Below are positions 6,693-62,408 of a DNA stretch of 64,000 bases, piece by piece. Position numbers and translations under genes: made by a program. Position 1 is the stretch's first letter, and the number at the start of each line of letters is the position of its first letter. The stretch is from Bugula neritina (Eukaryota; Animalia; Bryozoa): assembly GCA_964035545.1 (NCBI GenBank), contig OZ037768.1:2760741-2824740 (forward strand). Reading direction: 5' to 3'. Below the pieces are notes generated by a model that saw only the letters and a program-made list of their open reading frames with translations, was not told the DNA's origin and ran no database searches.

Positions 6693-8150
6693 TTATTCCA
6701 GCAAGAAGATATCTAATGCTAGATATACCAAGTTTCCCAAATCATCATCATATTGATAAGGCGAATTTTTCACAACAACATCTTCAAAATTCACATCTTC
6801 AAGTTTTATGTCTGACTTCATACGACTATTAGCGAAATCAAATGATGTCAGTGGGCGTCTAAGAATAGAGCCTGCCCTTTTCTCGTGAATGTAAATGACA
6901 CCCGACTTAAAAGGAACTGTTCCACAAAAATTCTGACTGATTTCCAAGCTAAGAACGCTGAGTCGCTGCTTTTCCGTGTTAGAAACAAGCATCTGCCGAT
7001 GGACAAACATCTTTCGCATCAACGTGACGCAGAAACCAAATTCTCTCCCACCACTGTCAGCTTGCGACATACTGTTTTTGACTTTAAAATATGAATCCAT
7101 TTTTGACCAGGAGTTTAAGCCATCAGTGTTCAACAACCGGTATTTCATGCACAAGGCACCATCTAAATACAGGCGGTAGTTAGGTAAAGCCATAACACTC
7201 GATCGCTTAGCCTTCACAACTACATGGTATTTGTAGGCATCGCAGAGCAATGCCTTTATAATCGAGGTTGACAACTTAAAATTGGTTGAAGTTTTGTCAC
7301 TGAAAAGTCTTTTTGGACAATTTTCAACATAACTCATTTCTTGTACATGCATATATGGAAGGCGTAGAACTTCACTGAATTTCTGCAGAAGTTCAATTCG
7401 TTCATTTTCATTGTACTTCATTAAAAGCCACGATTCAAAGAGTTTAAACAAAGAAAACTCAGTGCGACAAACTATTTCATTTGATGATAAAAATTCTACC
7501 ATATCATCTTCGTCGAGAGAAGCGATAATGTTTTCATTAGTCATAATCAGCTCGATATTACTAAAGAGAAGAGATTTTAGGACATTGACACAGTCCTGTC
7601 GTTTGCAGAGTATCTTGTTAATCATTTTCCAGCCATTTAGAGCTGATAGTAGATCACCAGTCAATTTCACATCAAGATTGAAAACATCCAAACATTCATT
7701 CAAAAGGGAGTCCAACGCATACTTGTCGCCATAGTAGACGAGTGCTTCAACGTTCTGCAAACAGATGCGGAGAGGCAAGCCGTACAAATACTTCAAGAAA
7801 TCCTGAAATGCGTCAACGTATGTCTCAACCTCAGTAAGGACAATTTCATTAGCAGTTGATTCTTGCCAATTAACTCCATAGAGCATAGCTCTGAACACAG
7901 GACTTTGGGCAAGAACTATCCTATGAGCAGGATATTTATGTTTTCCCACTGCTAATAATAAGTCATGAGTTTCAAAGTCCCCATAAGTGCTTGAAATATG
8001 CCTAACTATATTACTTGCATGATTTGTGCAGTTTTTCCCTCCACTCCCAGTAGAATTACCATTAAGTGCCGATTCGCCAACAATGTGCCTATTTGACGAA
8101 TCTAAGCTATCTCTTCTGGACATAGAACTAGAAGGCCCTATACCTGCCAT
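6693..8150 (-). CDS. Intronless BTB/POZ-BACK domain protein (BTBD17-like putative Cullin-3 substrate adaptor), 485 aa
   Basis: Single 1458-nt ORF. BTB motifs DLLLAVG..YPAHRIVLAQSPVFRAML..WQES..EIVL and FQDFLKYLY..DKYALDSL; BACK-like SLDEDDMVEFLSSNEIVCRTEFSLFKLFESWL..LRLPYM. Confidence 0.85.
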   Translation of the reverse strand: MAGIGPSSSMSRRDSLDSSNRHIVGESALNGNSTGSGGKNCTNHASNIVRHISSTYGDFETHDLLLAVGKHKYPAHRIVLAQSPVFRAMLYGVNWQESTANEIVLTEVETYVDAFQDFLKYLYGLPLRICLQNVEALVYYGDKYALDSLLNECLDVFNLDVKLTGDLLSALNGWKMINKILCKRQDCVNVLKSLLFSNIELIMTNENIIASLDEDDMVEFLSSNEIVCRTEFSLFKLFESWLLMKYNENERIELLQKFSEVLRLPYMHVQEMSYVENCPKRLFSDKTSTNFKLSTSIIKALLCDAYKYHVVVKAKRSSVMALPNYRLYLDGALCMKYRLLNTDGLNSWSKMDSYFKVKNSMSQADSGGREFGFCVTLMRKMFVHRQMLVSNTEKQRLSVLSLEISQNFCGTVPFKSGVIYIHEKRAGSILRRPLTSFDFANSRMKSDIKLEDVNFEDVVVKNSPYQYDDDLGNLVYLALDIFLLE

Positions 8151-8595
8151 ATTTGTTTACAGCCTGGGTTCTAACAACATTTCTACAAGGAGCATTATGT
8201 AACGAAATACATGAACTTCAATATATTATTAAAATGAAAACAATTTTATAGGAACCTAAGCTACAACTTATACTATTAGCAGCTTACTTGATCATGGTGA
8301 TAAATAAACACGACTATTGTTGAAGATATCACTGGATGTTTTACGTCCTTGACCTAAATTGCTTGTTGCCATTCGCTCAGTAATATTTATCTAGAAATTT
8401 GCATAAAATAATTAAAATAAATACCAATAAGCTATTACTATACACATTGATATGCCTTGTAACTTGTAAGTGTTTTCACACAAAATAAAACGCTTTATAT
8501 TGACTTCGATAGCAACTAAAAGTGAGCTCGAGCCTTACAAAAAGCTAAACTGAAACTCAAATTTAATTAAAATTTCAACGGCTCAAATTAACCTC

Positions 8596-10253: not shown

Positions 10254-13200
10254 ATGGCTAGTGACAGATATATGTACAACCACTTTCTACTGCTACTACT
10301 ACTGAACACTGCAGGTATGAATTTAGGTTAGATATTTTTGTGGTTTGCTTTCTACGTTAATCCCAATGCCAGTCAGATGGGTGATTCAATCGTTAAATAA
10401 TTAATGTATCTGTCAAAAATCATGATATATTGTTATTTCCATGTGTACAACCAGACTGGCTGTTGAAACAACTAAGATTAATGGGCTGAACATATTACTT
10501 GTAGTTATTGTTTGTGTTAATGCTTCTAAGCATAATAGTATGTACTTATATGGCTTGGTGTTATACTTGGATGGTATCTTTATAAACTGTACTTGAATGA
10601 AGGTGATACAGTTTTCTGGGTACCTGTGCATAATAGGTGTTGAGAAGTGGCCTACCCTACCCTTACACTCTTGTTTCAGTTAATTAGTTTCTGCTTTGAT
10701 TATTTTACTCCATGTTACTAAATCTGACGCTATTTTGAAAGTGGATCAAATAAAGATTGGGGAAGGGGGGCTTAGGATGGGGGGGGGGTTGTGTAAAATT
10801 ACTTTCTCATGCCATCAGCAAACCTAACACATAATGTAAGTTTAAGTCTAACCTTAATGTACCTATACGTAATTCAAGTAACTTCTATAGCTCTCTGCAC
10901 ATCTACTCTTTCCTGATATGACATTATAATATACAAGTCGCACAGTGTTGTTGGGAAATGACTTCTGAGGCTAAATTAGACCTTGGTTAGTCTGAGATTG
11001 CGGTATAACCTGTCAAGGTGTCATGTTCATGTCACCAATCACGCCTTCCGGCTACATTGTACAACTGATATGCTGCACTTCCAGGTAGTATAGAATACGG
11101 AGAGCTGGTTTCCTCTCTACACGCCCAGCTATTTAAGAACTACAATGCCTTGTACAGACCACAGCAATTAACTGATGTGAACATTACCATGTCTTTAGCC
11201 TCCGTTGTGGACGTGGTGAGTAGTCCATAACATGTTCATGCCTTCATTGGAAAATAATACATACACTGTGGCAAGCTTCTTACCAGTGAAACTGTGGTCA
11301 CAAATAACAGATTGTGAAGTGTAAAATGGTCTTAAATTGTTATTATTTCATACAGCCACTTTCCAATTTATGTACACTTGCATGTTATATTACAGCCATT
11401 GCACTGTTATGTTTGGCACATGATATCTGTAGAAGATGTATTCTTTACCTTTAATCCAGTTCTTTTTTTTAGTTGACTGGCTCCTTTTACTACAGTAAGT
11501 TTGGTTGTGATTGTGAACAGCAAGTGCCTTGAAACTGCTGGTTTTTGCTTCTAGCTCATAGTTACTTTGCCACTTTCACCTTACTATTTCCTGTTGGTGT
11601 TGTTTGCACGCACATAATAATTTTTCTTTTTCTCTTTGCTTTTCTGAGTTTTCAACTGCAAGCATTGATCTGTTTTGTAGATATTTACATTTAGTTGTTT
11701 GAGTTTGCTCAGTGAGCATGGTTCCTGTATTGTATATGCTACTTTCATTTATTGCCGACATTTGTGTAGGCTCCCATGTATTTCTCTGCTACATTCTAAA
11801 TGTTAGCATGGCTTCACCTGAACACTATTTTTTTATTTAGAATGAAAAAGAAGGCCACATTACTACTACATTCGTACCTAAAATGGTAAGCCTAATAATT
11901 ATCAACATAACAAACACATGATGTATGCGTAGGATGTGTGAAACCACCTTATAAATCAATGGGGCTTCCTTTCCAAATATAACATTTATTTTTAACTTAA
12001 CACAATAAGCAAGCAAGAATTTGTCTTTTTCTCACTATTTTTCAAAGTCAGAATTGAAAAGCTGTTTAAAGACGATCTTTAAAATATAAAATGCTTATAG
12101 AGCTGGGTAGACCCTAGACTACGGTGGGACGATTCCAACAACTCAGAATTTAAAAAGATTGATCACCTGCAGGTTCGGAGGTCAGATGTTTGGGTACCTG
12201 ACCTGGAGGTGTTGAACAGGTGAGTGGTCAGTGTGTTGAACAGGTGGGTGGTCAGTGTGTTGAACAGGTAGGTGGTCAGTGTGTTGAACAGGTGGGTGGT
12301 CAGTGTGTTGAACAGGTGGGTGGTCAGTTGTGTTGAACAGGTGGGTGGTCAGTGTGTCGAACAGGTGGGTGGTCAGTGTGTCGAACAGGTGGGTGGTCAG
12401 TGAGTTGAACAGGTGGGTGGTCAGTGTGTTGAACAGGTGGGTGGTCAGTGTGTTGAACAGGTGAGCGGTCAGTGTGTTGAACAGGTGGGCGGTCAGTGTG
12501 TTGAACAGGTGGGTGGTCAGTGTGTTGAACAGGTGGGTGGTCAGTGTGTTGAACAGGTGGGTGGTCATCAATTGTGTTGAGTCATCTGTATCTAGAACTA
12601 ATGCTGATACCTGTATAATTTGTTTACTCAACTGTACCATATGTTATGCTACCTTACAGATTCCAAGACGTAGCTCATGACTTATCTCTGCTGCCTTTAG
12701 TCTGGGTTCACGGAGATGGCACTGTATACTATGTCCCTCGCCAGACCTACCAGACACCTTGCCGCTTCAACATGCATAAATTTCCATACGACAGCCAGCA
12801 CTGTCAGATTATACTGGGGTCGTGGGCTTATCTCCCTAGTGAGGTAGGCATTACCAACTGCCTTCACCTACTTGTACTTATAGAAACAACTACTATGTTG
12901 TATGGTAGGGGTGCGGGAGTACCCCTCCCCCCCAAGATTGTTTAGGGAACTTTAAGAGATACTTTGTCTATTTAAAATATTGCTATGTTCAATATTAGTA
13001 GTTTGTCAGTTTATGAAATCATGTTATGTAATGTAAAACATAGACATAGTAGAAGGGTGCCTGTAGTATAGGAGAAATGAATGAAGAGCACAGGCTAAAT
13101 TAGTTGGGGAGTTACTATTCTATGGGAACCACACACTATAAAATATGGGCATGTTTTAGTTCTGGTATACTAATCATAAATTCACAGAGAAAAGTTGATC

Positions 13201-15846
13201 TGGAATAATTTCATCAAATTTTTTTATTTGTAACTTTTAGCTATTTTCAGTCTTTTCATGTTCTGGTTTTTTCGTAAACTAGAAGTTCAGTTTGTCTAGC
13301 GTCATGCAGATAATAATATTTTAGAATCAATAAATCAAATCAGTTGATTAATAGAGAATTTCATGAAACCATACTGCTTGGTGATAATTTGAGTAATGGC
13401 TATATTCTGATGTATTATATGTTACATAACTGTGGTATAATTAAAGTCTAAACAAAAACCTTCTCTTATGCAGATTGACTTTCACCTGTACAAAAATGGC
13501 ACAGATCACCAGCTGTTAGTTGAGCACAACGACTTTATTCTCACTGTACTCAACATTACCAGAGTGGAGGCAACTTTCGATGGCATCTCCACGCACTTTG
13601 TCGAACTGTATGTAGACATATTCCTAGCCAGACGTCCTAAGTTCTTCTACTATATGTATCTCATGCCGGCAGATATAATGGTGTTTATATTACCTTTTGT
13701 TCACCTTCTACCTCCTTCTTCCGAGAGCAGACAGGCTTTGTGTAAGTATTTACTCTGGCTTTTGAGAGAAAATTTTTACAATCTAAGCATTGGTACAAAT
13801 TCAGTGTAATATTCTTTTTCTGGTTTCTCATACTTTTGCGTTTCTGCTTCACCTATTTATATTTATTACTTGAGTAATTGGTATCATTTATAAGTTTTAT
13901 GTGACATTCATATTTGTTGGAATTTGGTGTGTGTTACAGTGGGGGCAATTCTCATAAGTGCGATACTGATGCTGAACACACTGAACGATTTTATGCCTAG
14001 TTATGCTACCGCTGAAGCGCCACAGCCCTGTAAGTAGCATATTCACACCACTTTGTTCTTACTGTTTATTTAAACATAGTCATTAAAATAATTTACTTCA
14101 GTTTTTTTTATAATTTTAGTATGAAACACAATTTAAACCCCAAATGTCTAGACTGTTGAGATGAGAAAATGACTGTATAAATTGATTAAGCAATGAACTG
14201 CTAGTAAATTTCAACTAATGAAGAATAACTAAGAATCAAATACTGATGAAACACAGAGCCTTTACATAGCATATTTTTATAACTCTACAAATATATAACC
14301 AATAGCCAAATAACAAATCTTACATATTTACTTTTATTCGTCACATCTCCAGTTTGTGTCATGACAATAGAATGAAATTGAGGCATATATTCAAATTGGT
14401 TAAGTTCTTCATTAGTGATTGTATGTGATGTATTAAATACAAATGTAGCTCTTAGTTGGTTACTCTTAGTGTTTCTATTACACACCGTCACCTCTACTCA
14501 CTAGAACTCACTTATGATTACTATCACTATCACTCACCAAGTTCATCCCTTTTCTGTCAGTTTTGTTCATAATGATAACTTCCATATAAGTCTATCACCC
14601 TTACACTATATACTATAGTTGTGCACATCTTTGCTGGTAAACTATGTAAATATTGTATTACTTCGAGGTGGTTGACTGATTTCGTCTTGGCTTACCTTGT
14701 TATTATTAGTTCTACACCTGCATTCAATAAATAGAAGCTCATTTTCAGAGAGGTTTGCAAGTTACAGATCTTTGAACTCTTATTTTAGTAAAACTCTACT
14801 TGGCGTGTATAATGTCTACACTCATAAGTATCTTTGGAAGTTGTGTTACCATGTCACTGGCTCGTACCGACGCCAAGACTGGACGAGTACCACGGGCTAT
14901 TCAGAAAGTAAGTTCACCGAGGCTATGCTGTGTTGTGAACTGAGTCTAGAAGCTATGCTGTGTTGTGTACTGAATCTAGAGGTGAGATGATACTAATATC
15001 GTTACACTGCTACTTCTGTCTCATCTACATATTGATGTGTTATCAGATCCTGACCGTCTGTACGCCGTGCAAACAAGCGCAGCGAAATGAACACGCCAGC
15101 TATCAGCTGCTACATCTGGAGAAAATGCTTCAGATGTCTGCAGAAGGTGAAGAGAATGGGGAGGAGCTTCATTCAGCCAATAACGTCACAGATAACGCGG
15201 TGAGTAGTAATAGCTGATAGGACTAGTTAGTACTGAAGTTTTTATTTAGGTCACGTGTAGTTGGCTTACATAGGTATTGGCAGCTGATGATTATATATAT
15301 ATATGCTCAACAGTCGCATTATTTGAGGTATTCCTGTGATGTGTTGGTGTAAAACTTTTTATATAAATTTATTTTTACATGAAAAAACTAATATATTTGT
15401 GTAAAATGTGCAGTCCTGTGAGACTTCCGTGTGTAAGGATTTGTCAAGTGAGCTATGAGCTGTGTATGCTGTGGCACATGGATCATGATCAGATGCCCTT
15501 CCTAACATCACCAGTAACCCTGCAGGGGTTTGCACTCATGACCTTAGGCTAGCTAGGCCTATAGCTACTCCTGTTTCTTCCTTTTTAAATGTTCTGAGAT
15601 AAAATCATGCATGCTTTACATCTAAGTTGAGAGTTGTGATTCCAGGAAGAAGCGAGACAACTCCACCAGCAAGAGCAGAGAGGCACCATGAAGGTACTGC
15701 AACAGCTAGTCAGTGAGCTACAACTTGCCCGGTATCGGGAACAGGTCAAGGTCGAATGGGTCAACTTTGCACAACTCGTCGATAAGATTTTTGTTATTGG
15801 ATTTTTTATTTCTGGAATCTGCTTGCTCAAGTATAACCACTACTAG
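10254..15846 (+). CDS. Divergent non-alpha nAChR-like Cys-loop receptor subunit, complete, ~456 aa
   Basis: Exons 10254-10314, 11085-11215, 11841-11885, 12101-12219, 12660-12843, 13474-13741, 13940-14029, 14789-14907, 15047-15199 and 15646-15846 join into one 1371-nt frame. Signal peptide; LFKNYNALYRP; WVDPRLRW..VWVPD; Cys-loop CRFNMHKFPYDSQHC; GSWAY; pre-M1 RRPKFF; four TM segments; EWVNFAQLVDK before M4; no loop-C vicinal Cys. Confidence 0.88.
12207..12568 (+). repeat. 24-bp minisatellite (GTGTTGAACAGGTGGGTGGTCAGT) x ~15 containing the exon end and splice donor
   Basis: The first copy is the true exon end GTGTTGAACAG|GTGAGT; the following copies repeat it mostly with GTGGGT. Confidence 0.95.
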
Positions 15847-28127: not shown

Positions 28128-31041
28128 TCATAACAAGGCAATCCCACCAGCCACATACTCCATCCTCTACAGTACATACAACATTCACTGCAATGATGCT
28201 CACTGCATGAAATCAAAAACAACACAGCATTGATTTAATTACTTCAACCAAACTAACAATGTGATATAGTTGAAGGTACAGTAAAATGTTATGGTCCCAA
28301 GACAGCTTGCTTTGTATATATTTCAACAGTATCATCAATGCACACACAAGTGTTGCGAGCAGCAGTGAAAAATAAGTCAGAAAAATAAACCATGGAGTTT
28401 AACTGTTGCATTTAATTAATTAGCAACAAACATTATGTTAGGAGTTGTCCTTCCATAACATTGAATCAAAGTCTAAAGCTTTGACAACTGTTGTCAATTA
28501 GTAGAATTTTTAGAACGAGCTGTGCCAAGAACACAACTCAAGTTTAACTTCAGAAGAGTTGCTGTTAGAGACAACTCTTTCAGCTTCATGATACACCGTG
28601 TACGTGTGTGTGTGTGTGTGTGCGTGTGTGAGTGTATGCATGAGTGTGTGTTGAATGTTGTTAGATACAGACAGACAAATACAAACCTGAGGCGGGTCAG
28701 CAAAAGCCAGCCAATCAGATGCATGTGTCGGCAGCAAACCCATGGAGTTGCATTTATATACAGCTAAGGCGACAGCAACTAGATTTCCACTAATATATGC
28801 TAATTTTTGAAGAGGTGCTTGTTCTCCCTGAATCATCTTGAACGCTATATAACAGAAACATGCACTGAGGATATAATAGATGTAGTAAGATAGTATACAG
28901 CAAGGTACGACAACTCTTAAAAAGATATATAACAGGAAAACCAAGAGGTCATTGTAAGTAATGCAAGTATCTCTCTAGACACCAACATCATTAAATAGAT
29001 CAAACAAAAAATATAACATAACAGCTGAAAAAACATGGGGACACCTTTTTTACTGATTTTCATTGTTAATAGCAAAAAATTCTAGCATTTAAAAAGTCTA
29101 GCCATCAAACATAACCAGCAGGGTGAATCCCTCTAATAGAAACCACTGTAAGAAACAGAATTGACCTACTTTGAGATAGAGAGAGAAAAGCCTGTATGGG
29201 TCGTACTGCCATCATACCGACCATCATGATGGGGAACATAGAGATGGAGTTACCCGCCATCCACATCATGAATAGGTTCATCGGTACCTGCTTGATGGGC
29301 CCCAGGGCTACATCCCATGATCTCTGTAATGTTTACCACACAAACTCATATGTACAATGATCTCTATAATGTTTATTAGACAAACTCCAAGATACAATGT
29401 GGGCTGGCAAAATAAACACGTGTTTCACCAACAAATACCAGAGCTGGAGTTCATATAAATGTAGAATGATCGTGTGTATATATTTAAGTACCCCAATCAG
29501 TATTTCAACATCCAGCTTTAGGAACCCAGATTAATATTGGGTTTCTTCATTTGTTTTGTTTTAAAAAACTAAATTAAAGCAAGATTTACCTCCCACACAA
29601 ACACTGTGTAATTGTAAAAGTCTATGAATCTTAGTCATACTTTGAATGAGCTGAGCTATTAGATGGGGTATAGTAGAAAGCATAGTATTAGTAAATGACA
29701 TTAGAAAGTGACTATTGAATGCTCAAGAATATACTGATAGTACACATTTGATAAATATTGAGAACCTAAACTAATAAATATTTATCCAACAAATTCTAGA
29801 AAATCTAGTTTGTAGTCCTTTTTGCCAAAATCCATACTTGTTGTATTTTATCTTACCAAAACTACACACAAAATGCGAAATTTATATATCAATGCAATGT
29901 ATTATCCGGCGATCACTGATTGCTATTGACGGAATATAACTTGAAATTTCTAGGTTATGGCCCATAGAAAGCACATTAAAAACACGAGTTTAAAAACTCA
30001 GAGCACAGATTTTTATATAATACGCAGACAAACCAGCCAACCTTCACAACTAGATCTTTGTCCACATTTTGGTTACGTTCAGAAACCTCCATTCCGCCAT
30101 ATTTGACATAACTGTGTGGAGCAGGTAACTCTTGAAACTTCACTACTGATGACCTACAAACATGCTACTATTATAATAATACTACAATAATTTACACTTA
30201 TCAATTATAGTTAATGTTATACCCATCACATCTATAAAAATTTGAGATTAGGACCTATTTGAAATAATGATTTTAATTGTACTGATATTTTTTTTCCCAA
30301 ATTTTTTTATGTCTACTTATTATAGCCAGTATTTACACTGAATTTTGCAACATATTTTCATGTCTGTGATATGTAATAAATCAATCATTATTGTCATTTA
30401 GCAGACCTAATTCATTAGTAGTAAACCACTATCAGCATCAGTAAACAGTATTGAAAATAAGTATCTCCAAATCTAACACCCAGTCCAACAGTAACAGGGT
30501 AACAGCAATGCAACAACTAACAGGCAACAGCTAAAAGTAAATATCAGTAACTCTAATTTTAAGTCTATGAGTTAAAACTACGAGTTACATTTAGACTTAA
30601 GTCTAGAGCTACTGCTCGGGCCAGGAGCCTAAAACTAAAAGTACAACTACAGGCAAACTGAAAAAATAATTTATATTTAGTCTTACAGCTATTGAAAATA
30701 AAACTAAAAGTAAACTTTAGAGTTTAAACTTAGTCAGAGTGACTACTGATAGGGATTAGTCTCAAGTCTTACTCTTAGTCTTCGACTTACTCTTAGAGTT
30801 ACTGTTAGTGTAAGTCTAAAAGTAAAAGTAAAACTAAAAATTAAAATGCAAGTACTGAAAAACAATTTGGTCAAAGTAAAATACACTATGGGATGATACT
30901 ATGGCTATACTTTATAGTGAGTACAACAGCCTTGAACACAAAAATAAAACAACTGCTTATATTAGTATACCCTGAACTGCTGGACATATCCAAGTACCAT
31001 CTTTTGTGCTGTTTTCTCTCCCTTCGTTCACTTGACGCCAT
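28128..31041 (-). CDS. EMC4: ER membrane protein complex subunit 4 (TMEM85)
   Basis: Exons ~31041-30971, 30153-30042, ~29324-29169, ~28845-28687 and 28166-28128: ..[78 protein letters not shown]. Confidence 0.95.
28604..28650. repeat. (GT)n microsatellite in an EMC4 intron
   Basis: Interrupted GT dinucleotide run. Confidence 0.85.
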
Positions 31042-31455: not shown

Positions 31456-34400
31456 ATGAACCAGCAAGTTAGTTGAACTTTAACTTAATAAGTTAATACT
31501 TATTGAAACTTATTCTTAATATTTAATTTATAATTTAAATTTTAATTTATACTTGAAGTCATAGTGACCTATGGTCACACTCACTATTACTATAGTTTAA
31601 ATAGACCTAAAAAGTGGATACGAAACGACTTGTGTACGAAATGACCTGCACCCATTTAATGATTTATGGTTGCAAATAACTCACAGTGATACTCATAGTC
31701 ATACTGATAGTCGTTATCATAATGATTATCATTATGATTATTCATTATTGATTATCCATTAATTTTAAATTTAATATTAATAATTATACTTATTTTATTG
31801 AAATAGAATTTCTATTGATAATAGTGGTATTATAAATAATGTTGGATATAAATATAAAATATGGATATCACTGTTGAAAGTTATTGTTAATGTTAATGTT
31901 AGACCCACTCTTAGTGTTTGAGTGTTAGTGTTGGATTCATTTACTCTTAATCTTAGAGTTGGTCATAATCATAGTCATAGTGTTAATGATAGACTCATAG
32001 TGATAGTCATAGTGTTTTCTTTTTTAGTTGAACCTACAATTAGTGTTAAATTAATAACTAGTAGTAGTGTCATGTCTAATACTAATAGTAATAGTAATAG
32101 TCTAATACTTTAATACAATTACTATTAGTCGTACTTATATCAGCACTGAATTTAATGTATTTTTATAAATCTTTTTATACTATTGTGATTATTATTATAA
32201 TTAGGTGCGGCAAGTGCAGCCTGGTTATGAGTTCATGGTTGTTGATCGACACACTGAAACTAATTTTGAAATGTTATTTAGTTGACAGCTTGTGATATCC
32301 AAAGCAGCAGAGAACTTTTTTCAAAAATAAAAGAAACAGCTGACAAACTTATAGAACGGGTCAAAGGTATTACAGAACAAATCAAAACAGGCGAATTCAC
32401 TACAAAAAATGTAAGTTGTTCTCTACTTGGTGTGCTGTAAATAAATGTTCAGTTAAATCAGTTAACATTTTTATTCTAGTCTCTATTGGTCAATCACACT
32501 AATATTTGACTTCTTTTAAAGGGTATTTCATTTTTGGATGTCAAGAATGAGCTTTTGGGTCAGTATAACCTAAATATTGGAGGTGTGGTGGCCAGGAAAA
32601 TGTCTGGCATCTCTATAGAAGACTGTGAGGAGGTCGACAGGCTAGCAGAAATACGAACTGTAAGTGTGCAATCTGCAAATAATAGACATAGTTTTTGTTG
32701 TTTGCATTTAGACTTTGGACAAACTTCTCGATTTCTAAAAGTTATGAAAAGGTGATAATTAGTTGATGCATTTTTGGTGTAAAATGTATATTGAAGGATT
32801 GTCCTAAGTTAGTATGTATTGTGTGAGCTTTTTCTACTAACCAGTACAGCACAGACACTAGCTAGAAATGTTCGGATTAACTGTGCTCCAATGACGGAGT
32901 GTCTGGATACATGTACATGTGCTTATGCACACAATTGGTTATTGGTTCAACAGTTGTAAACATCTCATTCAGTTTTATTTTTTATTGTTATTGTGGGCTT
33001 AAACTTGTGTGAAGTATTATATATAAATGAGTTTAAATGAACTTAAAAAATATTTATATTTTAGGTTGCAGTTTGTATGATAAAGTATAATGCTGTTAGC
33101 AACTGCTTTGATACAAACTTAGATTATGATGTTTTAGTATCTTTGCTAACCCCAGCTAAACTAAAACCTTTATGCTGATTGACTCTGAGATAATAGAGAT
33201 TTAAATTTGAAACTCAAAGCCTTTATATTTTTTTTAAACTTGAGAATTATTCAAATCTGCTCAATGTAAAAATACGTACGCTATAAAAGTAGGTTTGATA
33301 TAAGAGAATGAAACTGTTTGGTGGATGTGCTACAACAAATAAATGATAATTTAACAAACACATGTTTGGAATTTTTTGCCCATTCCAATTATGAAATGTG
33401 ATTTTTGGTAAAGCGACTACTTTTCAAGTTCTTGCCAAGAAATTTAAGATGGCTGTTAGTATCAAGTAACTCCAAGTATAAAGTATATTGTATATTTGCT
33501 TATTTTTCAGTATATAGAAAAGAGTCGTCCAATAGAGCACAAGCTGAAATATCAAATGGAGAAACTCTTGAAGATAGCAGCTTCTGGCGGTTTGAGTATG
33601 TATAAAAAAGCTATCGCTATCTCTGTGAGAAACCCCTGATGGAAAAGGTTTTTGTTAGAACGGGCTAAGGAGTTGTTCAGATGAGGCACAGGAGCAATTA
33701 TGAATGGATGCTCTTCTTAACATCACCAATGGTCTTTGTCGGGGTGATGTTATACTTGTAGACAGGCTAGCCAAAGTTTTGACTGCATTAGTGTATATTT
33801 CTCTAGCCAATTGATTGAAAATTCATACCTGCTTAATATGTAATATTAACGTCTAACGTCTGGTATTGATATGTTTGTTTGATATTTTGAATTGATGAGT
33901 GCAGAAGGAACTAGATTGACTTTCTTTGGTATACCATATTGTAGGTAATGATGATCCATTACACCTGAAACCTAACCCAGCTAACATGGTTAGTAAACTA
34001 GCTGGACAGGGGAGTGACAACTCTGATAGCGAAGAGAATGCAGATGGGAAAAATGCTTCCGGTGAAAAAACTGGAGTCTATAAACCTCCAATGATGTCTA
34101 GCTCTCATTACGGTAATAACCAAATTTGTTTTAAAAAATTATTAGCGACCTATCTGCTACTGCAAACCATATAAAAATCAGTCTATTTTTTTGTAAGTGA
34201 AATCATTATAAATTATATTAAAAGAAATTATTTTATTACAAAAACTTGCCGTGATGGTGCACTGACTGGTTTAAGAAGTTTTGATTTTCGTTAATGAGTA
34301 ATACTTGTTCTCGTTGACAAAATCCTGAAATAAAAGTCAGACAAAAATGTAGCTTTATTCCTTATATGAGTGTTTAGCAAAGCAATTTGGTTTTGTAAAT

Positions 34401-35257
34401 GAAAATATTTTTTCTAAACATATTTAAAGGTACTAGTTATATAGTATACACTGTATAATGTACTAGTCATGTAGTCTAAACTGTGTAGTGTACTAGTTAT
34501 GTAGTCTGCACTGTATAATGGTATTTTAAAGCGGAAGAACTGTCCAGAAAGGAAAGAGAAGAAAAATTGATAGCAAAGGCCAAACGAAAAGCTTTGAGCA
34601 CGGCTATGATGAGAGAGTTGCGGGCGGAGTACTCGGAGGCCCCTGAAGAAGTGAGGGAGGACATGAACCTCCACCGCTTTAAACAGTCTAAAGAAGACAA
34701 GCACCGAATAGCTTATGAAGAGGATAACTTTAAACGAGTTGCTATCAGCAAACAGGAAAAGGTGCGTGGGCATGTGCAAAGACTAGATGGCGCTTTATAT
34801 AAGTAAAGTCTTAGTAGAATGTAGGCACAGCAATGAAAAGTAGTGACTAATTCATGCATAATGCAAGGAGTGTATTCAAGAGTTGCCTTCTCATAATATC
34901 AGACAATATCGTGTAAATATTGTACTATTACACAATGCAACAGTTCTGATCTCCCTTTATTTCAGTTTTCTATAAAACCAATACCCAGTGGCTGCTGTGC
35001 ATGTGTACGCTGAATCTCTAACTCCCTACATGTTGCTGCACTCACTGCATGTAAATGATTTGCTAGATTAGCTCCTGTATCTGTATTTGCAGAGACGACG
35101 CAGTCAGCTGCAGACCGTCTCTTCGCTAGACCAGCTTACCAAGTTTGGAGATATTTCAGCTTTGACTGGAGGCTCATCGGGTGTTGCGGGTGGCAAAAAA
35201 CGAAAACTCAAGTCCAAACCCAAGTCTGGTCACAAGAAGAAGAAAATACGAATGTGA
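31456..35257 (+). CDS. NGDN: Neuroguidin (Sas10/Utp3/C1D family, Lcp5 homologue)
   Basis: Exons 31456-31467, 32282-32410, 32522-32659, ~33510-33595, 33945-34112, ~34532-34761 and 35093-35257: GISFLDVKNELL..RLAEIRT YIEKSRPIEHKLKYQMEKLLK..DPLHLKPNPANM..YKPP..ELRAEYSEAPEE..YEEDNFKR..basic C-terminal tail. Confidence 0.92.
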
Positions 35258-35459
35258 ATGAATATTTAGCTGATGAGTCTAACAGCTTCGCCATTTCTTA
35301 CTTTTTTGCTGATGTTGATATACTAAGTTTTACATATATCTGTTGATGTGTATATAAAATACAGTTCCAGTAGGTTTCAAAGACATTTTCAAGTGAAAGT
35401 GAGTTTATTTTTGGGTAAAGATGACGGAAGATATACAATAAACTGAATTAAATATAGGA

Positions 35460-40854: not shown

Positions 40855-42559
40855 GGTACTAGTAACATTATCACTAACATTAATTTAATCATCAGTATGA
40901 GTATCAGTATGACTGTGAGTATCAAATAGTTATCACAAAATGTAAATGTGCAAGTTAAATGTCTCATTTAATTTTATGACTTAAAACAGTGTCAGTGTGC
41001 TACACTTGTAGGTATGACAGTGAATCAGAATGTTGCTAATTTGTTGTTACTTACTTTTACAGGTATTTAATTTTGTTTTATTTATACTTTTGTCTTATAC
41101 TTATAGTTATAGTTATGGTTACTAATAGTAATAGTAATACTAATATAAATTTTCAAATTATAACTTATAAGTATTAGTTATACTAAGTCTAAAAGTAATA
41201 CTTATACTTATAATTATATTTATTATTTATACTATTTTATTACTATGTTTATAGTATAGACTATAGTAATACTAATAGTTGAACTAAAACTTGAAGTTAA
41301 TGTTTTTGTTGTAGTATTAGTAATAATATTAGATTTAGTATAACTATAACTTATAAGTATTAGTATTACTATAATTTACATGATTTACTCAAAGTAAATA
41401 TGTAGGAGTAAAAATGGTGTTGTTTATGCATAGCTTAAGTGCAAAATAAATTTAAATCTTCCAAGGTTACATTTGAGATACTGCATTAGGTAATGAATTA
41501 TGGTTTTTCTGTAGCTGTGAAACTTTATAAGATATTTATGTTGATTTTTCTAATGGGATGTGAAGCAGTTGTTTTCTATAGTAGATCAGGTAATGGAATT
41601 TACACAGGTCTCAAAATTACTAAAGTGCAGTGTTTACTTTCTGAAAACAATACCCCGCATTTGTATATCTGAGTGTTTTTTTGGACCAGATTCAAATTGA
41701 AAAATATATGAGTGAATTTGTTAGGTCTAAGATGTACATGGATATAGCCTTACTTCCATGCTTATGCTTTGATTTACTGACTATTGTGTGAACTGGAGGC
41801 TAATCACTGCTACTCATAGGGTGAAAAATTAAATGTCTTGAAACGACGAAGTCAAACTTTGGTTGAATGTTGGCAATTATTTAACAAGTTTGGCCTGCTA
41901 TGATATTCTTATTGTAATACGAGTAATATAGTCAAAATAAGGAGACATTTATTTAACTAAATTTATTTTTCTGAAGGGAATTTTTCCTGTAGCCTAACCT
42001 ACATATCTAATTTATTTAAATCTTTGGATTTTATGAAAAACAATAATTGATTTCAGTTTTTAGTTCATATACTTATCAAAACTCATGGTCTATATATGTG
42101 ATACTTTAAGTCTCTTTTCTTCCAGCTATAAAATCTTTATTGGCTATAAAATCTATGCTCACATTATATAACTTTTACTATATAGACATACTGTATACTT
42201 ACACAATGTATATATAATATAAGTTGTATAACATTGAACCAGCATACAATAATACCAAATTGCAGCTATACCTGCAGGGGGTATGCATGCTTCATCCGTG
42301 TGACTACCATTGCTGTGACATCACACGACAACTGACAATTCAACAAGATACTTATGTTAGGTGACCTCTATTCATGTTTCAATGACATTCTATGACCTCA
42401 TTGCCTCATCAAATAAATACTTCAACTTTTATGATATGCAATTTATATTGTTGCCAAATACTGCATTTTTGCACAAGTTTTTATCTGTTGTAGTTTGGAT
42501 AATTCTAATGAATGATATCTCAATTGGATAGTTTAGATATCATTATGATTGATTGAAGA

Positions 42560-45500
42560 ATGAATAAAGGAACTATTTTTGATATCCACGAAGCATTTAA
42601 GGTAATCCAAACATTCATAATAGCTCTATGTGATAGGTTTTGTGCTGCATTGTGGTGTTGAATTGTGTTTTGTTTTTATGAAGCTATCAATTTTGCTTGT
42701 TTCCTTTAAAGATATATAGATGTTCTTTGTAAAATATAATAAATTATTGATTTCTGTAAAATGAAACACTTGCCTAAAAATTTATAAAATGTGATTTTTT
42801 GTTACATTTGTGTATTGAACTTGAGAATATAATGCATTCATTTTGTTAGAGACCAGTTTCACCCGAGATGATTTCTTGGCGTGTGTGCAGTGTCATTGGC
42901 CATCATCATAATTATTTTCCACTCTTATCACTGATAGCACAAATACTGTATAGGGGTGAAGGGATTGTAGTTACTGATGTATAATAATTGTGGGGTTGTA
43001 GTTAACTGCATGTGGCGTGTCATCAGCCCAGTCGACGTGGCCCAGAGTCAGCGTGTCAAATACTGGACTCACTTGTGTTATTCACAATGATGAGAAAAGC
43101 GAATCTGTGGAATCAATGCACTCCAGTAGTAGCAGCAGGCAAGATTCCAAGGCCACCAGGGTTAGTCTGCGTGTTGACTTGTAAAATAATTATTATTATG
43201 TCTATCAGCTTGACCTCCTGAACTCTACTATGTAGTTTCTTTCTTTCATTCACATTCTTGTTATCCAACACTCTTCACTGTCTTTTTTAAATAAACCTTT
43301 TCATCAACTTTGAAGTTCTTTAATAGATGGTGAAGATAGAGTGATTGAGGTGAAATACTGATGGTATCTATATACATAACATTTATACACTATATAAATA
43401 ACACATGTTATGTAATGTATACCTGCACATGTTATGTAATGTATACCTGCAGGTTACAATCATCACTGATGAAGGGAAAATCATATCCAGAAGTAAAACT
43501 GTAGCTGAGTCAGCCAAGGTTCATCCCACTAAGCCCATTATAGCTTTGAAAGGTATTTGTTGCCAGTAGCCCTCTAGTACTGCTCTTATAGGAGGGGGGG
43601 GGGTACACACACCAGCCCCTCTAGTACTACTCTTATACAGTAGGTACAAAGGTATTATGCTGGCAGCCTAATTAGCTGTATAAAAATATTACTTTGATAG
43701 GAGGTAAGCTTTACTGATCTTGATAACCTGCAGTGTGCGCACACCGAGCCTACTGGTGGAATATTAAGATTATTTTTTCTATGTGCAGGTTTAAATGTGA
43801 TGTAGTTATACACCCTAACATTCAGCATAGAGAATAGTTATTTTACAAACATGTGTCTGAGGCACGTAGCTAGAATCAACACTTGCTGGTCACACTACTA
43901 CTCCGTATGAGTCAGGAGCTTGAATACTGAAATGTGTTGCTGACACACACGCGCTGCCAACAGTTGGGCAGCGTTATAGCAGTGACATTATTGTGGTGTG
44001 CTGTCGGCTTACCAGTTAACTGGTCATTCTCCCTTCGCTGTTTGTGCGCTTGTTTCACACTCCAAAAAATCTTTTATGATAGCATATATTCTAGCAGACA
44101 TTTCAGTAGCTTCCAATAACAAATTTCAACTTCAAAACAATTTTTTTTTCAGCGCATAGCGTGTTCCAAGTTTACAACTTTGAGTCAAAGAATTTGCTGA
44201 ATGAGTTGGACATGGTGCACGATGTCTTATTCTGGAAGTGGACGAACGAAGACACTATTATACTGGTTACAGAGGCCAGCATCTTCCAGTGGATGGTGTT
44301 TACAGGTTAGCTTGGCTTATATCCTCTTTCTAGAACTTTCTGGTAGCATCTGGTAGACAACATCTGGTAGACAGCATCCACCAGGCGTGAGGTAGTCGTC
44401 TGGATGAAGTGAGGTGTTGGTGTAACTGCCGATGAACTTCAGTTGACCTTATGCAATAATAGTATAGACTCCACTCCTACATGCCTTTCAAATTTTCCAA
44501 CAACTACATGTGTCTATACTGGGTATCTGTGACTGGTTGCTACCAGGGGGAGATGCTGTGATGACTCATAATGTGGAGTATATATCTCTGTATGAAATGA
44601 TGACTACCAGTATTACGGTGGATTTTATGTCTAACAATCATATCGAATGTAACTTTTACTTAGCATTGGCTGATGCTTCTGGTACACTTCTATCCCACAA
44701 TACTGCCACAGGATGCAGTGATGTTGCATTGAACTTCAGAGCTTATTTATTTGATTGATTTTCAATTATTTCTGTCAGTGTGAGACTATATGCCGCTTTC
44801 AGTTACTGAAACATGAGTGTGCTTACAGTGTTATATAAAATAGCGCATTTACCCAGGATTTAGGTTGTAGCAGTGGATCGGCAATTAATAAGGAATTTTC
44901 ATCCCTTCCAACAAACGGTGCCTCACAGTATATCACACAATATAAGAAAGGGTGTATCATATACTAGTGTAGTATATTATATACTAGTATAGTGTATCAT
45001 ATACTAGTGTAGTGTATCATCAACCATCGTTGGGTTTTCTCAGAGAGAAGTGAGGCGGAGTTTATCTGTCATCGTCTTCCACGACTGAATTGCACAGAAG
45101 TTGTGAACTGTGCTATAGACGATAACCACAGGTGGTACACTGTTACAGGACTTCTTGATCATGGAAAGGTAAATCATGATTTTCTTGCTTTTGTCTAGAC
45201 TCTAGTCTAATAGCAATTCTCTGTATGGTATGATATGCAAGAACTATAACTGCACTAGCCAAAGTAATGTGCTATGATGTGGTAATATATAGTAATGTGC
45301 TGTGATGTGGTAATATATAGTAATGTGCTATGATGTGGTAATATATAGTAATTTTCACCTTCAAATGGTTGAGATTTACTTGTCCAATGCTTTCAGCTAG
45401 TTTTATTTGACACCAGACATTGCAACCAAATGTTGCCAAGAGTGATTCTATAACTTTGCCAAAATAACGTATATTGTAAGTCGCAAGACAATAGCTCTGT

Positions 45501-47556
45501 GATAGAGAGTTTCTAGAAAGTTCATAAAACTTATCAGGATGTTTATCTGCTGGCATAGCGATGATTCACTCAATAGAACAGATCATTTCCTTGTCTTAGT
45601 AACAGTTGACAATAATTTAGTGACAATAAAAGTATGCTATTGTTCTGATTTCAAATATTTGTTATATTCATTTACTAAGCACTATCACACAACTCAGAGG
45701 GCATTGATACTTTGAAGTGTGTACCTGTGCAAACTTTAAGCACATGTTAGTGTTTTTATGCATAAGATTATATCTTTTCATGTTCGCATATGCAAATACA
45801 TGCTGTAGGTTTTTTTTGCTTGGAGCAAACAGTGCCCACCTGTAAACTATACCCCCAGTACTACAGCAAGGTTAAAGGTGAATCTCACGACTTAAAACCA
45901 GAAGATAGTAATTATTTAGCTGACTTTCTTGTTCTGGAACATATACTTCTACCAGTCTAGTTTATTTGTGTTTAGGACTCAGTGATAGAGGGCGTCACTC
46001 AGGTCTATTCTGCAGAGTATGGCGTGGCTCAGTGCATAGAGGCTCATGCAGTTACCTTTGTCACCCATCGGTTTGCTGACTCCATACATGAGTCTGTCAT
46101 CTTATGCGCTGCCTCCAGGCAGCTTCATTCTCCTCACCTCACTGGCAAGGTAAGTAAGCTAGTACAATAGTTCGGGTCTCAGTGAACCCGCCCCCCTCTT
46201 GTATTTAGTAGTAATGCTTATATTGCGATGACTGCTAAGTTGAGGCTTCAACCAAAATTCTTCCAGATAAGGTTGCGCCTACTCATCTATTTTAAGAGTT
46301 TCCTTCTCAATGTTTGCAACTTTGTTGTAAGTTAGCTTGTTCAAACAGTGGTTCAGCTAATCAGCTAGTCAAAGAAGTTTCATGTTGGGATATAGAATGA
46401 TTTTATGGGACTTTTTATTGCCCTGTTGGCAAAATGTCCATAAACTTAGATTACTAAACAATTTTACACCTTTGACTAATACATTTCTTTACATAAAAAT
46501 ATTTTATGCTAGAATACATGTTTTCAACATGTATGCCATGACATATGAAGTTTTTATATCAGTTGTTAGAATATGACATAGTATGCTTGCCAGATATTTA
46601 AATGGTGGCAGATATGATCTATTGCTGTTCTTGGTTGATGTTACACGGCAGTAATTTTTATTCAAGTTTGAGATGTTTTTTCTAATTTCGATTTCATCTT
46701 ACCAACTAGTTTTCGAGGCAACTCCATAAATGCAATATTTCTCTAACTCAATACTGCTTTTAATCGACAGGTGCACTGTATTGAGTTTGCCTCGGCCGCC
46801 TACTCCCAAACTATCCCTCGACTAGCGTCTTCCGATTTGAAGTTTTCTCCCCAACAAGATGGTAGCCAAAGCGTTGACAGCGACAGTAGCCAAAAGGTGT
46901 CTTCTAACCATGGAATAGATTTCCCAGTGTGCATTCAGGTAGTCTGTGTGACATGTTTTAACCTAAAGTTTTTATTGGTAGTCAAAGAGCCAGGTTTCCA
47001 CCTTGTAGAAAAACTGTTTGTGTTACAGGCAGATACAAGTCACTGCGTGCTGTATATCATCACCAAGTTCGGTACTCTGTACATAGCTGAGCTGGAGTCT
47101 GCAGTCGTTCTATCTCAAACTCGGATCTGCTTTGATATTACTTTCTGTAGCAGTCTCAATTCTCTGTCTACCCTAACAGTAGTCAATAAAGCCGGTCAGG
47201 TGTGTATGTTCACCATGCTTATGCCTTATAGTGGTGCAGCGCTTGTAATGGTGCAATGCTTGTAGTGATGCAATGCTTGTAATGGTGCAGTGTTAGTAGT
47301 GCACGTGACTTCTGAAAATTGTTGAGGTTGCGACTGTTAGAAATGTTGATGGCACTCATAGACTGTATGTCCGAGTAGATTACTGGATGGAAGGTTGATA
47401 AAGCATTGCGGCTCTCTGATACAGGTGCTGAACATTTCTATAGACTGGCTGTATTTAATCAAATACGTGACCACAGTGCTGAACAGACCTGATCTTGCCC
47501 AGAGATTACAGAACAGCAGGGGAATGGAGAATGTCAACTTGTTACTAGATGGATAA
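42560..47556 (+). CDS. Stand-alone clathrin heavy chain N-terminal domain (7-bladed propeller + linker) paralogue, 407 aa
   Basis: Exons 42560-42601, 43002-43160, 43453-43552, 44153-44305, 45044-45168, 45976-46149, 46771-46938, 47029-47199 and 47425-47556 give 1224 nt with no internal stop. It aligns to CLTC residues ~1-365: [152 protein letters not shown] lies ~50 nt after the stop. Confidence 0.9.
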
Positions 47557-48321
47557 TCCATTAACTTTTAAATTATATTTTTTTATATTTTTGCTGCTCT
47601 TGTAGAATAAAGTAAAGACATTGTACATAGCGTTAATATTGTCAATATTTTTGTAAAAATTATGAATTGATGTTTTTTTCACAATTTATATTTATTATAA
47701 TATTTTTATGTAATCATGTATAATATTGACAATAAATATACCAGCCTAGAATTTCAAATAATTATAACTATGTAGATTCGGTACTGTTCAGACATAGAAT
47801 AGACCAGAATACAGTGATAATGGTAAAACATTTACTAGAAACTAGCTGAATTCCTGTTTAATGCATAATTATGTAAAAGTCTGCATTGGTTCTAAAAACA
47901 AAACAACCAAAGATAGCATTTATTCAACACCATGGGATAACATTGTTGGGTGTTAAATATAGAGGATAAGTACAACAATTGTTGGTTGGCTAATTCAATA
48001 AATGTAACCAAATGTGGACAAATTCTATGCTAACAATACTGTGTAGCAAAATAACTTACAACTACATTGTCCTTATGCTGTAATTATTGCAACCCATTAG
48101 ACACTCTACTTGGAGCTTATAACAATATAAACGTGATAATATAACGGAAAAATATGAATAATTAGTTTATGTAATAAACATTTGACACAATAATATGCTT
48201 TGGGAGGAAGGATGTTTAACGTCAGTGGCTGAAGCCCCCAAACCTACTGCTCAATTGGAATAGATATCAGTCTAATAGTGGAATCTAGTCAAGTCTAGTA
48301 TAATCGTGGTGGTGACTGTCT

Positions 48322-62408
<14,087 letters not shown>

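What the first reader, a model, noticed from the sequence alone, without database searches (positions are those of the whole stretch)
42560..47556. Intact terminal-domain-only clathrin heavy chain paralogue, tail-to-tail with CLTC
Seen: nine GT-AG exons splice into an uninterrupted 407-aa ORF homologous to the clathrin beta-propeller and linker. It ends cleanly (..LNRPDLAQRLQNSRGMENVNLLLDG*) 765 bp from the CLTC stop codon, followed by AATAAA. It is heavily diverged yet has no stop or frameshift and keeps structural motifs (FWKW, IEAHA, DFPV, TKFG, GQVL), which points to purifying selection rather than decay. Known: the terminal domain is clathrin's adaptor-binding hub, while the legs, light-chain site, trimerisation domain and QLMLT are needed for triskelia and are all absent here; vertebrate CHC22 is full length and CLHC1 has a different architecture. 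Inference: a monomeric propeller acting as an adaptor decoy/regulator of coat assembly or as a re-purposed peptide receptor. I do not recognise this as a described gene family.
Basis: partly seen in the sequence, partly recalled or inferred. Interest (0 to 1): 0.9.

Follow-up and report, generated by a model that had tools for sequence, protein, structure and literature searches.

The report
Ancient propeller-only clathrin paralogue in animals
This is a real, expressed gene for a shortened copy of clathrin that keeps only its partner-binding head; it belongs to an old family shared by many invertebrate groups, filed in databases merely as 'clathrin heavy chain-like', and I found no paper that describes it.

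Summary
Nine GT-AG exons give a 407-aa ORF that stops 765 bp from the CLTC stop. All eight junctions are spliced in RNA contigs from four studies. Omega is about 0.02-0.03 against two orthologues. The animal is a bryozoan (inferred), and Watersipora has the same PSMD11 / gene / CLTC order.

It is not a local CLTC fragment. Orthologues, mostly 370-400 aa and ending near clathrin residue 358, occur in annelid, nemertean, mollusc, priapulid, chelicerate, myriapod and echinoderm genomes. They form one side of a 100%-supported branch, a bryozoan-only duplication is rejected (AU p=2e-6), and spiralian members share a private intron. An orthologue folds as a clathrin terminal domain (Z 44).

The binding sites are remodelled. 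The top-face (W-box) pocket is changed but conserved across the family, the arrestin groove is largely kept, the clathrin box is eroded, and Royle-box F9 is lost. Best reading: a monomeric peptide-binding propeller with its own ligand, rather than a general adaptor decoy. Function is untested. No earlier scan note covers this gene; its apparent trans-splicing agrees with s1-481163.

The parts
42492..42493 (+). AG acceptor upstream of the ATG; candidate spliced-leader trans-splice site (mRNA body begins at 42494)
   Evidence: Loose 22-nt 5' ends in two runs do not match the 4.6 kb upstream in the window but match multi-copy loci elsewhere that end in TAAAAG|GTAAAT
42560..42601 (+). Exon 1 (14 aa; ATG; clathrin residues 1-14)
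43002..43160 (+). Exon 2: blade 1 with the family motif T-W-P-R-V, H42 and a Ser-rich inserted loop
   Evidence: loop has low pLDDT in the orthologue model
43161..43452 (+). Intron before clathrin residue 50, phase 0; shared by bryozoan, annelid, nemertean and mollusc members, absent from this CLTC
43453..43552 (+). Exon 3 (clathrin residues 50-83)
44153..44305 (+). Exon 4 (residues 84-133; clathrin-box groove residues; FWKW)
45044..45168 (+). Exon 5 (residues 134-173; R147, E152, V154, W164, L170)
45976..46149 (+). Exon 6 (residues 174-227; arrestin-groove Q192, I194)
46771..46938 (+). Exon 7 (residues 228-265; H229, second Ser-rich insert, DFPV)
46939..47028 (+). 90-nt intron at clathrin 265/266; kept here and in other family members examined, missing from the neighbouring CLTC, present in four other CLTC genomic loci
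47029..47199 (+). Exon 8 (residues 266-323)
47425..47556 (+). Exon 9: last propeller strand, two linker helices, short tail, stop
47606..47611 (+). AATAAA (second copy at 47731); use not shown
48322..62408 (-). Full-length CLTC, convergent neighbour; the only other clathrin terminal domain found in the genome
35460..39864 (-). PSMD11/RPN6, head-to-head neighbour; same order as in Watersipora

Best explanation
The gene arose by duplication of the clathrin heavy-chain gene before the protostome-deuterostome split. It kept only the seven-bladed terminal-domain propeller and the two linker helices. It cannot trimerise, bind light chain or build a lattice (follows from the missing domains), so it most likely acts as a soluble monomeric peptide-binding module. 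Its main selected surface is the central top-face pocket, the former W-box site, rebuilt with family-specific residues (T26, W/F27, P28, R29, V30, H42, R147, V154, L170 in clathrin numbering). These add basic side chains and point to a new specific ligand, perhaps an acidic or phosphorylated one. The blade 4-5 arrestin groove is largely kept and could tie it to LL-type adaptor motifs, so a role at clathrin-related trafficking sites is likely. Shown: gene, splicing, selection, family, fold of an orthologue, residue pattern. Inferred: monomeric state, ligand type, pathway.
For: Splicing in four studies. Omega 0.02-0.03, lnL -3717.7 against -3968.8 at omega=1. About 30 orthologues in seven other phyla, most ending within 5-15 residues of clathrin position 351. 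One branch with SH-aLRT 100, AU p=2e-6 against a bryozoan-only origin, and a shared spiralian intron. Orthologue model pLDDT 81.9 matches the clathrin terminal domain at Z 44.5, rmsd 1.8 A over 353 residues. W-box residues (F27, Q152, I154, I170; PMC8805674) keep the clathrin residue only 0.19 of the time (4th percentile) but have family self-conservation 0.76 (95th percentile). Royle-box retention is 0.13. Arrestin-groove W164 is kept in 32/32, Q192 in 29/32, H229 in 30/32. L349 and A352 become mostly polar, and R354/N356/L357 are lost, as expected for a free C-terminal end.
Against: No binding, localisation or knock-down data. The site statistics rest on 4-10 positions each and are borderline, with four sites tested. 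Spatial clustering of the new residues is inferred from propeller topology and secondary structure, not measured on coordinates. W164 and H229 may be conserved for folding. The bryozoan protein still has I80, L82, Q89 and K96 of the clathrin box, with F91 changed only to Y. The trees are quick trees (SH-aLRT only) with long branches.
Confidence: 0.5

Rival explanations
1. Adaptor decoy or coat regulator: the free propeller competes with triskelia for AP-1/AP-2, arrestin, epsin or amphiphysin motifs and damps or edits coat assembly.
For: The arrestin groove is largely kept, and that groove also binds clathrin-box peptides (PMC5182127). Q89, I80 and L82 are mostly kept. The gene sits head-to-head with housekeeping genes in six loci, which fits broad expression.
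Against: K98 is replaced in all 32 members, T87 and K96 vary, F9 is replaced, and the W-box is rebuilt. A decoy should be held close to the CLTC surface, but this protein diverges about six times faster (dN 0.24-0.28 against 0.04; the two partner transcripts may not be from one species). A monomer also lacks the avidity of a triskelion (established knowledge).
Confidence: 0.27
2. Split clathrin: this gene and CLHC1 are the 5' and 3' halves of one fissioned heavy-chain duplicate, and their products re-associate as a non-triskelion coat element.
For: The family ends near clathrin residue 358, and the clathrin-like part of the CLHC1 candidate in this genome (G000:C9:1183548) begins at about residue 359-362.
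Against: Residues 1-363 are also the natural domain boundary used for crystal constructs. The linker-helix positions that probably pack on the next helices have become polar. The two genes lie on different contigs. The CLHC1 exon lacks the CLTC intron at 389. From memory, humans have CLHC1 without a known gene of this kind.
Confidence: 0.08
3. Role outside vesicle coats: the propeller was recruited as a scaffold elsewhere, for example in a spindle, ciliary or nuclear complex.
For: Most adaptor sites are altered. The clathrin terminal domain also binds spindle proteins such as GTSE1 and HURP (PDB titles). Echinoderm members carry a conserved basic loop that resembles a nuclear signal.
Against: The TACC3-binding ankle region is absent (established knowledge). 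The basic loop is limited to echinoderms. The arrestin groove is kept.
Confidence: 0.14
4. Decaying partial duplicate of the neighbouring CLTC, or a mis-joined gene model.
For: It lies next to CLTC and is only 28% identical to it.
Against: All junctions are spliced, omega is far below 1, the Watersipora orthologue is intact and syntenic, the AU test rejects a local origin, and it keeps an intron that this CLTC lacks.
Confidence: 0.01

Closest known systems
Clathrin heavy chain CLTC/CHC17, terminal domain + linker (PF01394, PF09268; PDB 1C9I, 5M5R)
   Same: Homologous seven-bladed propeller plus linker helices; six intron positions shared with the neighbouring CLTC; fold Z 44.5 for an orthologue; arrestin-groove core kept
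   Different: Stops near residue 358; no alpha-zigzag, legs, light-chain site, trimerisation domain or QLMLT; 28% identity; W-box, Royle box and part of the clathrin box replaced; two Ser-rich inserts in bryozoans
CHC22 / CLTCL1
   Same: A second heavy-chain paralogue with altered partner binding
   Different: CHC22 is full-length and vertebrate-specific (PMC11445476 abstract for its role; the rest from memory); this family is invertebrate-wide and cannot form triskelia. Database names such as 'clathrin heavy chain 2-like' are automatic labels, not orthology.
CLHC1 (clathrin heavy chain linker domain-containing 1)
   Same: A non-triskelion protein derived from part of the heavy chain
   Different: Carries the PF13838 linker and following repeat, not the propeller; a separate gene on contig C9 of this genome
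Database entries 'clathrin heavy chain-like' of about 370-480 aa (e.g. XP_067932137.1 Watersipora, XP_041456024.1 Lytechinus, XP_013786453.1 Limulus, XP_025090789.1 Pomacea)
   Same: These are the orthologues; the gene is a member of this unnamed group
   Different: Only automatic annotation; no family name or study found in the papers searched

Membership tests
Clathrin heavy chain (CLTC/CHC22) | N-terminal seven-bladed clathrin propeller | tested here: met
   28% identity to CLTC; PF01394 in 11/11 family members at E up to 0.1; orthologue fold Z 44.5
Clathrin heavy chain (CLTC/CHC22) | Linker helices 331-354 | tested here: met
   Exon 9 weak PF09268 hit, E 0.065; aligned to residue 351
Clathrin heavy chain (CLTC/CHC22) | PF13838 zigzag, CHCR leg repeats, trimerisation domain | tested here: not met
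   Stop at 47554-47556 lies inside spliced RNA contigs; PF13838 found only in CLTC and the C9 gene
Clathrin heavy chain (CLTC/CHC22) | Clathrin-box residues I80, T87, Q89, F91, K96, K98 | tested here: inconclusive
   Window protein: I80, Q89, K96 kept; T87V, F91Y, K98L; family retention 0.35 over nine positions
Clathrin heavy chain (CLTC/CHC22) | W-box residues F27, Q152, I154, I170 | tested here: not met
   W, E, V, L in the window protein; L170 in 32/32 members
Clathrin heavy chain (CLTC/CHC22) | Arrestin-box residues W164, L183, R188, Q192, I194, H229, I231, K245 | tested here: inconclusive
   W164, Q192, I194, H229, I231 kept; L183V, R188Y, K245L
Clathrin heavy chain (CLTC/CHC22) | Royle-box pocket L5, I7, F9, I282, N296, V327 | tested here: not met
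   None identical in the window protein, though several changes are conservative; F9 is I; family retention 0.13
Clathrin heavy chain (CLTC/CHC22) | Triskelion formation and adaptor binding | not testable with these tools
   Needs biochemistry
CLHC1 | PF13838 plus clathrin repeat, no propeller | tested here: not met
   Opposite domain content; CLHC1 candidate is a different locus
Unnamed bilaterian terminal-domain-only family | Groups with the 370-400 aa invertebrate proteins, apart from all CLTC | tested here: met
   One side of a 100* branch; seven of eight informative exons score higher on a profile of non-bryozoan members than on a CLTC profile (the family profile is broader, which helps it)
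Unnamed bilaterian terminal-domain-only family | Derived residues T26, P28, R29, V30, H42, T51, P78, F88, R147, V154, L170, A196, L293 | tested here: met
   All present in the window protein; in 24-32 of 32 members and at most 3 of 30 CLTC
Unnamed bilaterian terminal-domain-only family | Ends shortly after clathrin residue 351 | tested here: met
   15 residues after that column in the window protein; 5-15 in most members
Unnamed bilaterian terminal-domain-only family | Presence in chordates, cnidarians, sponges; absence in insects, nematodes, mammals | tested here: inconclusive
   An Atlas cluster of 51 mostly chordate proteins of 324 aa is the top hit (0.97) for two members, but its sequences could not be fetched; searches were not exhaustive

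The most novel reading that the evidence does not exclude
This protein and CLHC1 are the two halves of an ancient fissioned clathrin heavy chain and re-associate into a non-triskelion coat or scaffold, i.e. a second clathrin-derived system in animals, possibly also present in chordates.
Probability: 0.08. Interest if true: 0.92.

Novelty: new variant of a known kind. Interest (0 to 1): 0.73.

Why it matters
Clathrin heavy-chain evolution is usually told as one gene in invertebrates and two (CHC17, CHC22) in vertebrates (from memory). Here is a further branch, kept since before protostomes and deuterostomes split, that consists of the adaptor-binding head alone and hides under 'clathrin heavy chain-like' labels. 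It is a natural experiment on the four peptide-binding sites of the terminal domain. It also offers either a built-in regulator of coat assembly or a new peptide receptor. It can be tested in sea urchin, starfish, octopus, spider or tick. Mis-annotation also means that invertebrate RNAi or expression studies naming 'clathrin heavy chain' may have hit this gene instead.

Tried and rejected
The window gene was searched exon by exon or by the open frame over exon 7, intron 7 and exon 8. Full-length searches and the structure used database homologues (P0006, alignments A2 and A3, P0013 at 64% identity). The join was made only inside scripts, for frame checking, local alignment, trees and codon models.

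Rejected or corrected:
- My first guess of a sponge was dropped after the Watersipora orthologue and synteny.
- P0053 is an ordinary CLTC fragment and was removed from the family. P0023 (retro-element insert) and P0054 (fused to LSm1) are faulty gene models.
- Pseudogene and recent local duplicate: rejected.
- Conserved linkage to CLTC outside bryozoans: not seen within 10 kb in Patiria, Ridgeia, Tubulanus, Chamberlinius, Elysia, Tachypleus or Lytechinus.

Led nowhere:
- The careful (bootstrap) trees did not finish, so quick trees are quoted.
- Pairwise dS is saturated (pS 0.77-0.85), so omega is approximate.
- Three contig look-ups returned nothing.
- Paper searches for the family found nothing relevant; the library covers open-access papers only.
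- The candidate leader RNAs have no Rfam match and no folding signal above shuffles.
Full report
**Observation.** Nine exons (42560-42601, 43002-43160, 43453-43552, 44153-44305, 45044-45168, 45976-46149, 46771-46938, 47029-47199, 47425-47556) joined at GT-AG introns give 1224 nt, or 407 aa and a stop. An in-frame stop just upstream fixes the start codon. The convergent gene is a complete CLTC from 62408 to its stop at 48324-48322, 765 bp away. The product aligns to clathrin residues 15-358 at 28% identity, score 372 against at most 58 in 300 shuffles. A family profile finds only this gene and CLTC in the 216-Mb genome. The joined model was not sent to any search or fold tool. The window gene was searched by exon reference only, and the join was used only inside scripts.

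**Expression and selection.** RNA contigs from four studies show all eight junctions as GT..AG skips, and read from exon 9 through the stop into the 3' UTR, so the gene does not splice on into leg exons. These runs are marked RNA by guess, but intron-free joints show spliced RNA. They differ from the genome by a few per cent, including an in-frame 3-nt deletion in the serine run of exon 2. Against two bryozoan orthologues (64% and 67% identical), synonymous sites are saturated (pS 0.77-0.85) while pN is 0.20-0.23. A codon model gives omega 0.02-0.03 and fits 251 log-likelihood units better than omega = 1.

**Organism.** The closest named homologue is from the bryozoan Watersipora subatra. It has the same nine exons and the same gene order: Sas10/Utp3-family gene, PSMD11, this gene, CLTC. 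The window is therefore a bryozoan (inference); an earlier scan note names Bugula neritina, which I did not check.

**A family, not a one-off.** Searches seeded from the exon 7-8 frame and then from database homologues found proteins, mostly of 370-400 aa, in an annelid (Ridgeia), a nemertean (Tubulanus), molluscs (Octopus, Elysia, Physella, Pomacea), a priapulid, chelicerates (spiders, Limulus, Tachypleus, Ixodes), myriapods and all five echinoderm classes. Most end 5-15 residues after clathrin position 351. All carry automatic names such as 'clathrin heavy chain-like'. With CLTC terminal domains from metagenome loci as comparison, they form one side of a branch with SH-aLRT 100 (quick trees). 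Forcing the bryozoan proteins together with bryozoan CLTC is rejected (AU p = 2e-6).

Two lines of evidence do not depend on the tree. First, derived residues (T26, P28, R29, V30, H42, T51, P78, F88, R147, V154, L170, A196, L293) occur in 24-32 of 32 members, including the window protein, and almost never in 30 CLTCs. Second, bryozoan, annelid, nemertean and mollusc members share a phase-0 intron before residue 50 that this CLTC lacks, and all members examined keep the 265/266 intron that this CLTC lacks but four other CLTC loci have. The duplication therefore predates the protostome-deuterostome split (inference). Adjacency to CLTC was seen only in bryozoans; it may be a relic of the duplication or a later rearrangement. 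A 51-member, mostly chordate Atlas cluster of 324-aa proteins is the best hit for two members. That is a lead only. Absence from insects, nematodes, mammals and non-bilaterians was not tested.

**Structure.** The orthologue P0013 folds with mean pLDDT 81.9 and matches the clathrin terminal domain at Z 44.5, rmsd 1.8 A over 353 residues, far above other propellers at Z 23 or less. Its two bryozoan-specific inserted loops are low-confidence.

**Binding sites.** Site residues were taken from PMC5182127 and PMC8805674; R64, I66 and L82 were added from memory.
- W-box (top face): F27W, Q152E, I154V, I170L in the window protein. Across the family it keeps the clathrin residue 0.19 of the time, yet is among the best self-conserved sets (0.76, 95th percentile), and R29, H42 and R147 are new, topologically on the same face.
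- Arrestin groove: W164, Q192, I194, H229 and I231 kept; R188 and K245 lost.
- Clathrin box: I80, Q89 and K96 kept here; T87V, F91Y, K98L; K98 is replaced in all members.
- Royle box: F9 replaced in all members; retention 0.13.
- Linker: L347, A348, R350 and L351 are kept, while L349 and A352 turn mostly polar and R354, N356 and L357 vanish, as expected if the face that packed on the following helices is now exposed (inference).
These counts rest on few positions and should be read as directions, not proof.

**Mechanism.** Without legs or trimerisation domain the protein cannot be a lattice subunit. The pattern of change, with one site rebuilt and then held constant across phyla, fits a monomeric peptide-binding module with its own top-face ligand, possibly held near adaptors through the arrestin groove (0.5). 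An adaptor decoy remains possible (0.27), though the faster divergence and the lost residues argue against a general one. A role outside coats (0.14) and a split-clathrin pairing with CLHC1 (0.08) are less likely. The latter is prompted by the family ending where the CLHC1 candidate's clathrin homology begins, but that point is also the natural domain boundary.

**mRNA 5' end.** Two runs have different loose 22-nt ends at the AG at 42492-42493. They are absent from the 4.6 kb upstream in the window but match two related multi-copy families on other contigs, each followed by a GTAAAT donor, plus a few donor-less copies. This is what spliced-leader trans-splicing would give. It agrees with scan note s1-481163, which I saw only afterwards.

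**Novelty and verdict.** Seven paper searches aimed at the family found no description, within an open-access library only. The sequences are already in public databases, under misleading names. It is not a member of the clathrin heavy chains in the functional sense, nor a CLHC1. It is a new variant of a known kind: an ancient, apparently undescribed terminal-domain-only clathrin paralogue family. Interest 0.73.

Noticed in passing
window 42492-42494; loci L094-L106 (G000 C2, C3 around 31.46-31.63 Mb, C8 around 11.85-12.44 Mb, C1, C5): Two related multi-copy candidate spliced-leader RNA gene families (leader ending TAAAAG, then GTAAAT donor); both leaders appear on this gene's mRNA. Three copies (L094, L101, L103) have the leader without the donor part, like retro-inserted trans-spliced ends. 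No Rfam match, no folding signal.
   Followed up: partly
G000:C9:1183548-1183664 (L089): CLHC1-like gene; its clathrin homology starts at about heavy-chain residue 359-362, where the terminal-domain-only family ends.
   Followed up: partly
window 47557-48321: RNA contigs run continuously between the two stop codons, so the 3' UTRs of this gene and CLTC may overlap; AATAAA at 47606 and 47731 on +, and at 47691 and 47919 on -.
   Followed up: partly
window 46939-47028: Intron 7 is 90 nt, in frame and free of stops, so retention would add 30 aa; it is spliced in three runs and the Watersipora intron has a different length.
   Followed up: partly
L003, L004, L005, L086, L087, L091: Family members sit head-to-head with a housekeeping gene within 0.4-2.3 kb (PSMD11, SBDS, malectin twice, Spindly, CDC45); malectin linkage is shared by the annelid and the nemertean.
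   Followed up: partly
window 58697-58984: This CLTC lacks the intron at residues 265/266 that is present in four other CLTC genomic loci (L046, L047, L048, L051).
   Followed up: yes
window 1449-2900, 6696-8156, 12619-13806, 29108-29332, 32510-35343: Other genes seen only as open frames: nicotinic-receptor-like exons (two loci), a single-exon BTB-domain gene, an EMC4-like exon and a neuroguidin/Sas10-family gene.
   Followed up: no
P0023, P0054: Public gene models of this family that are faulty: one has a reverse-transcriptase fragment spliced in, one is fused to LSm1.
   Followed up: partly
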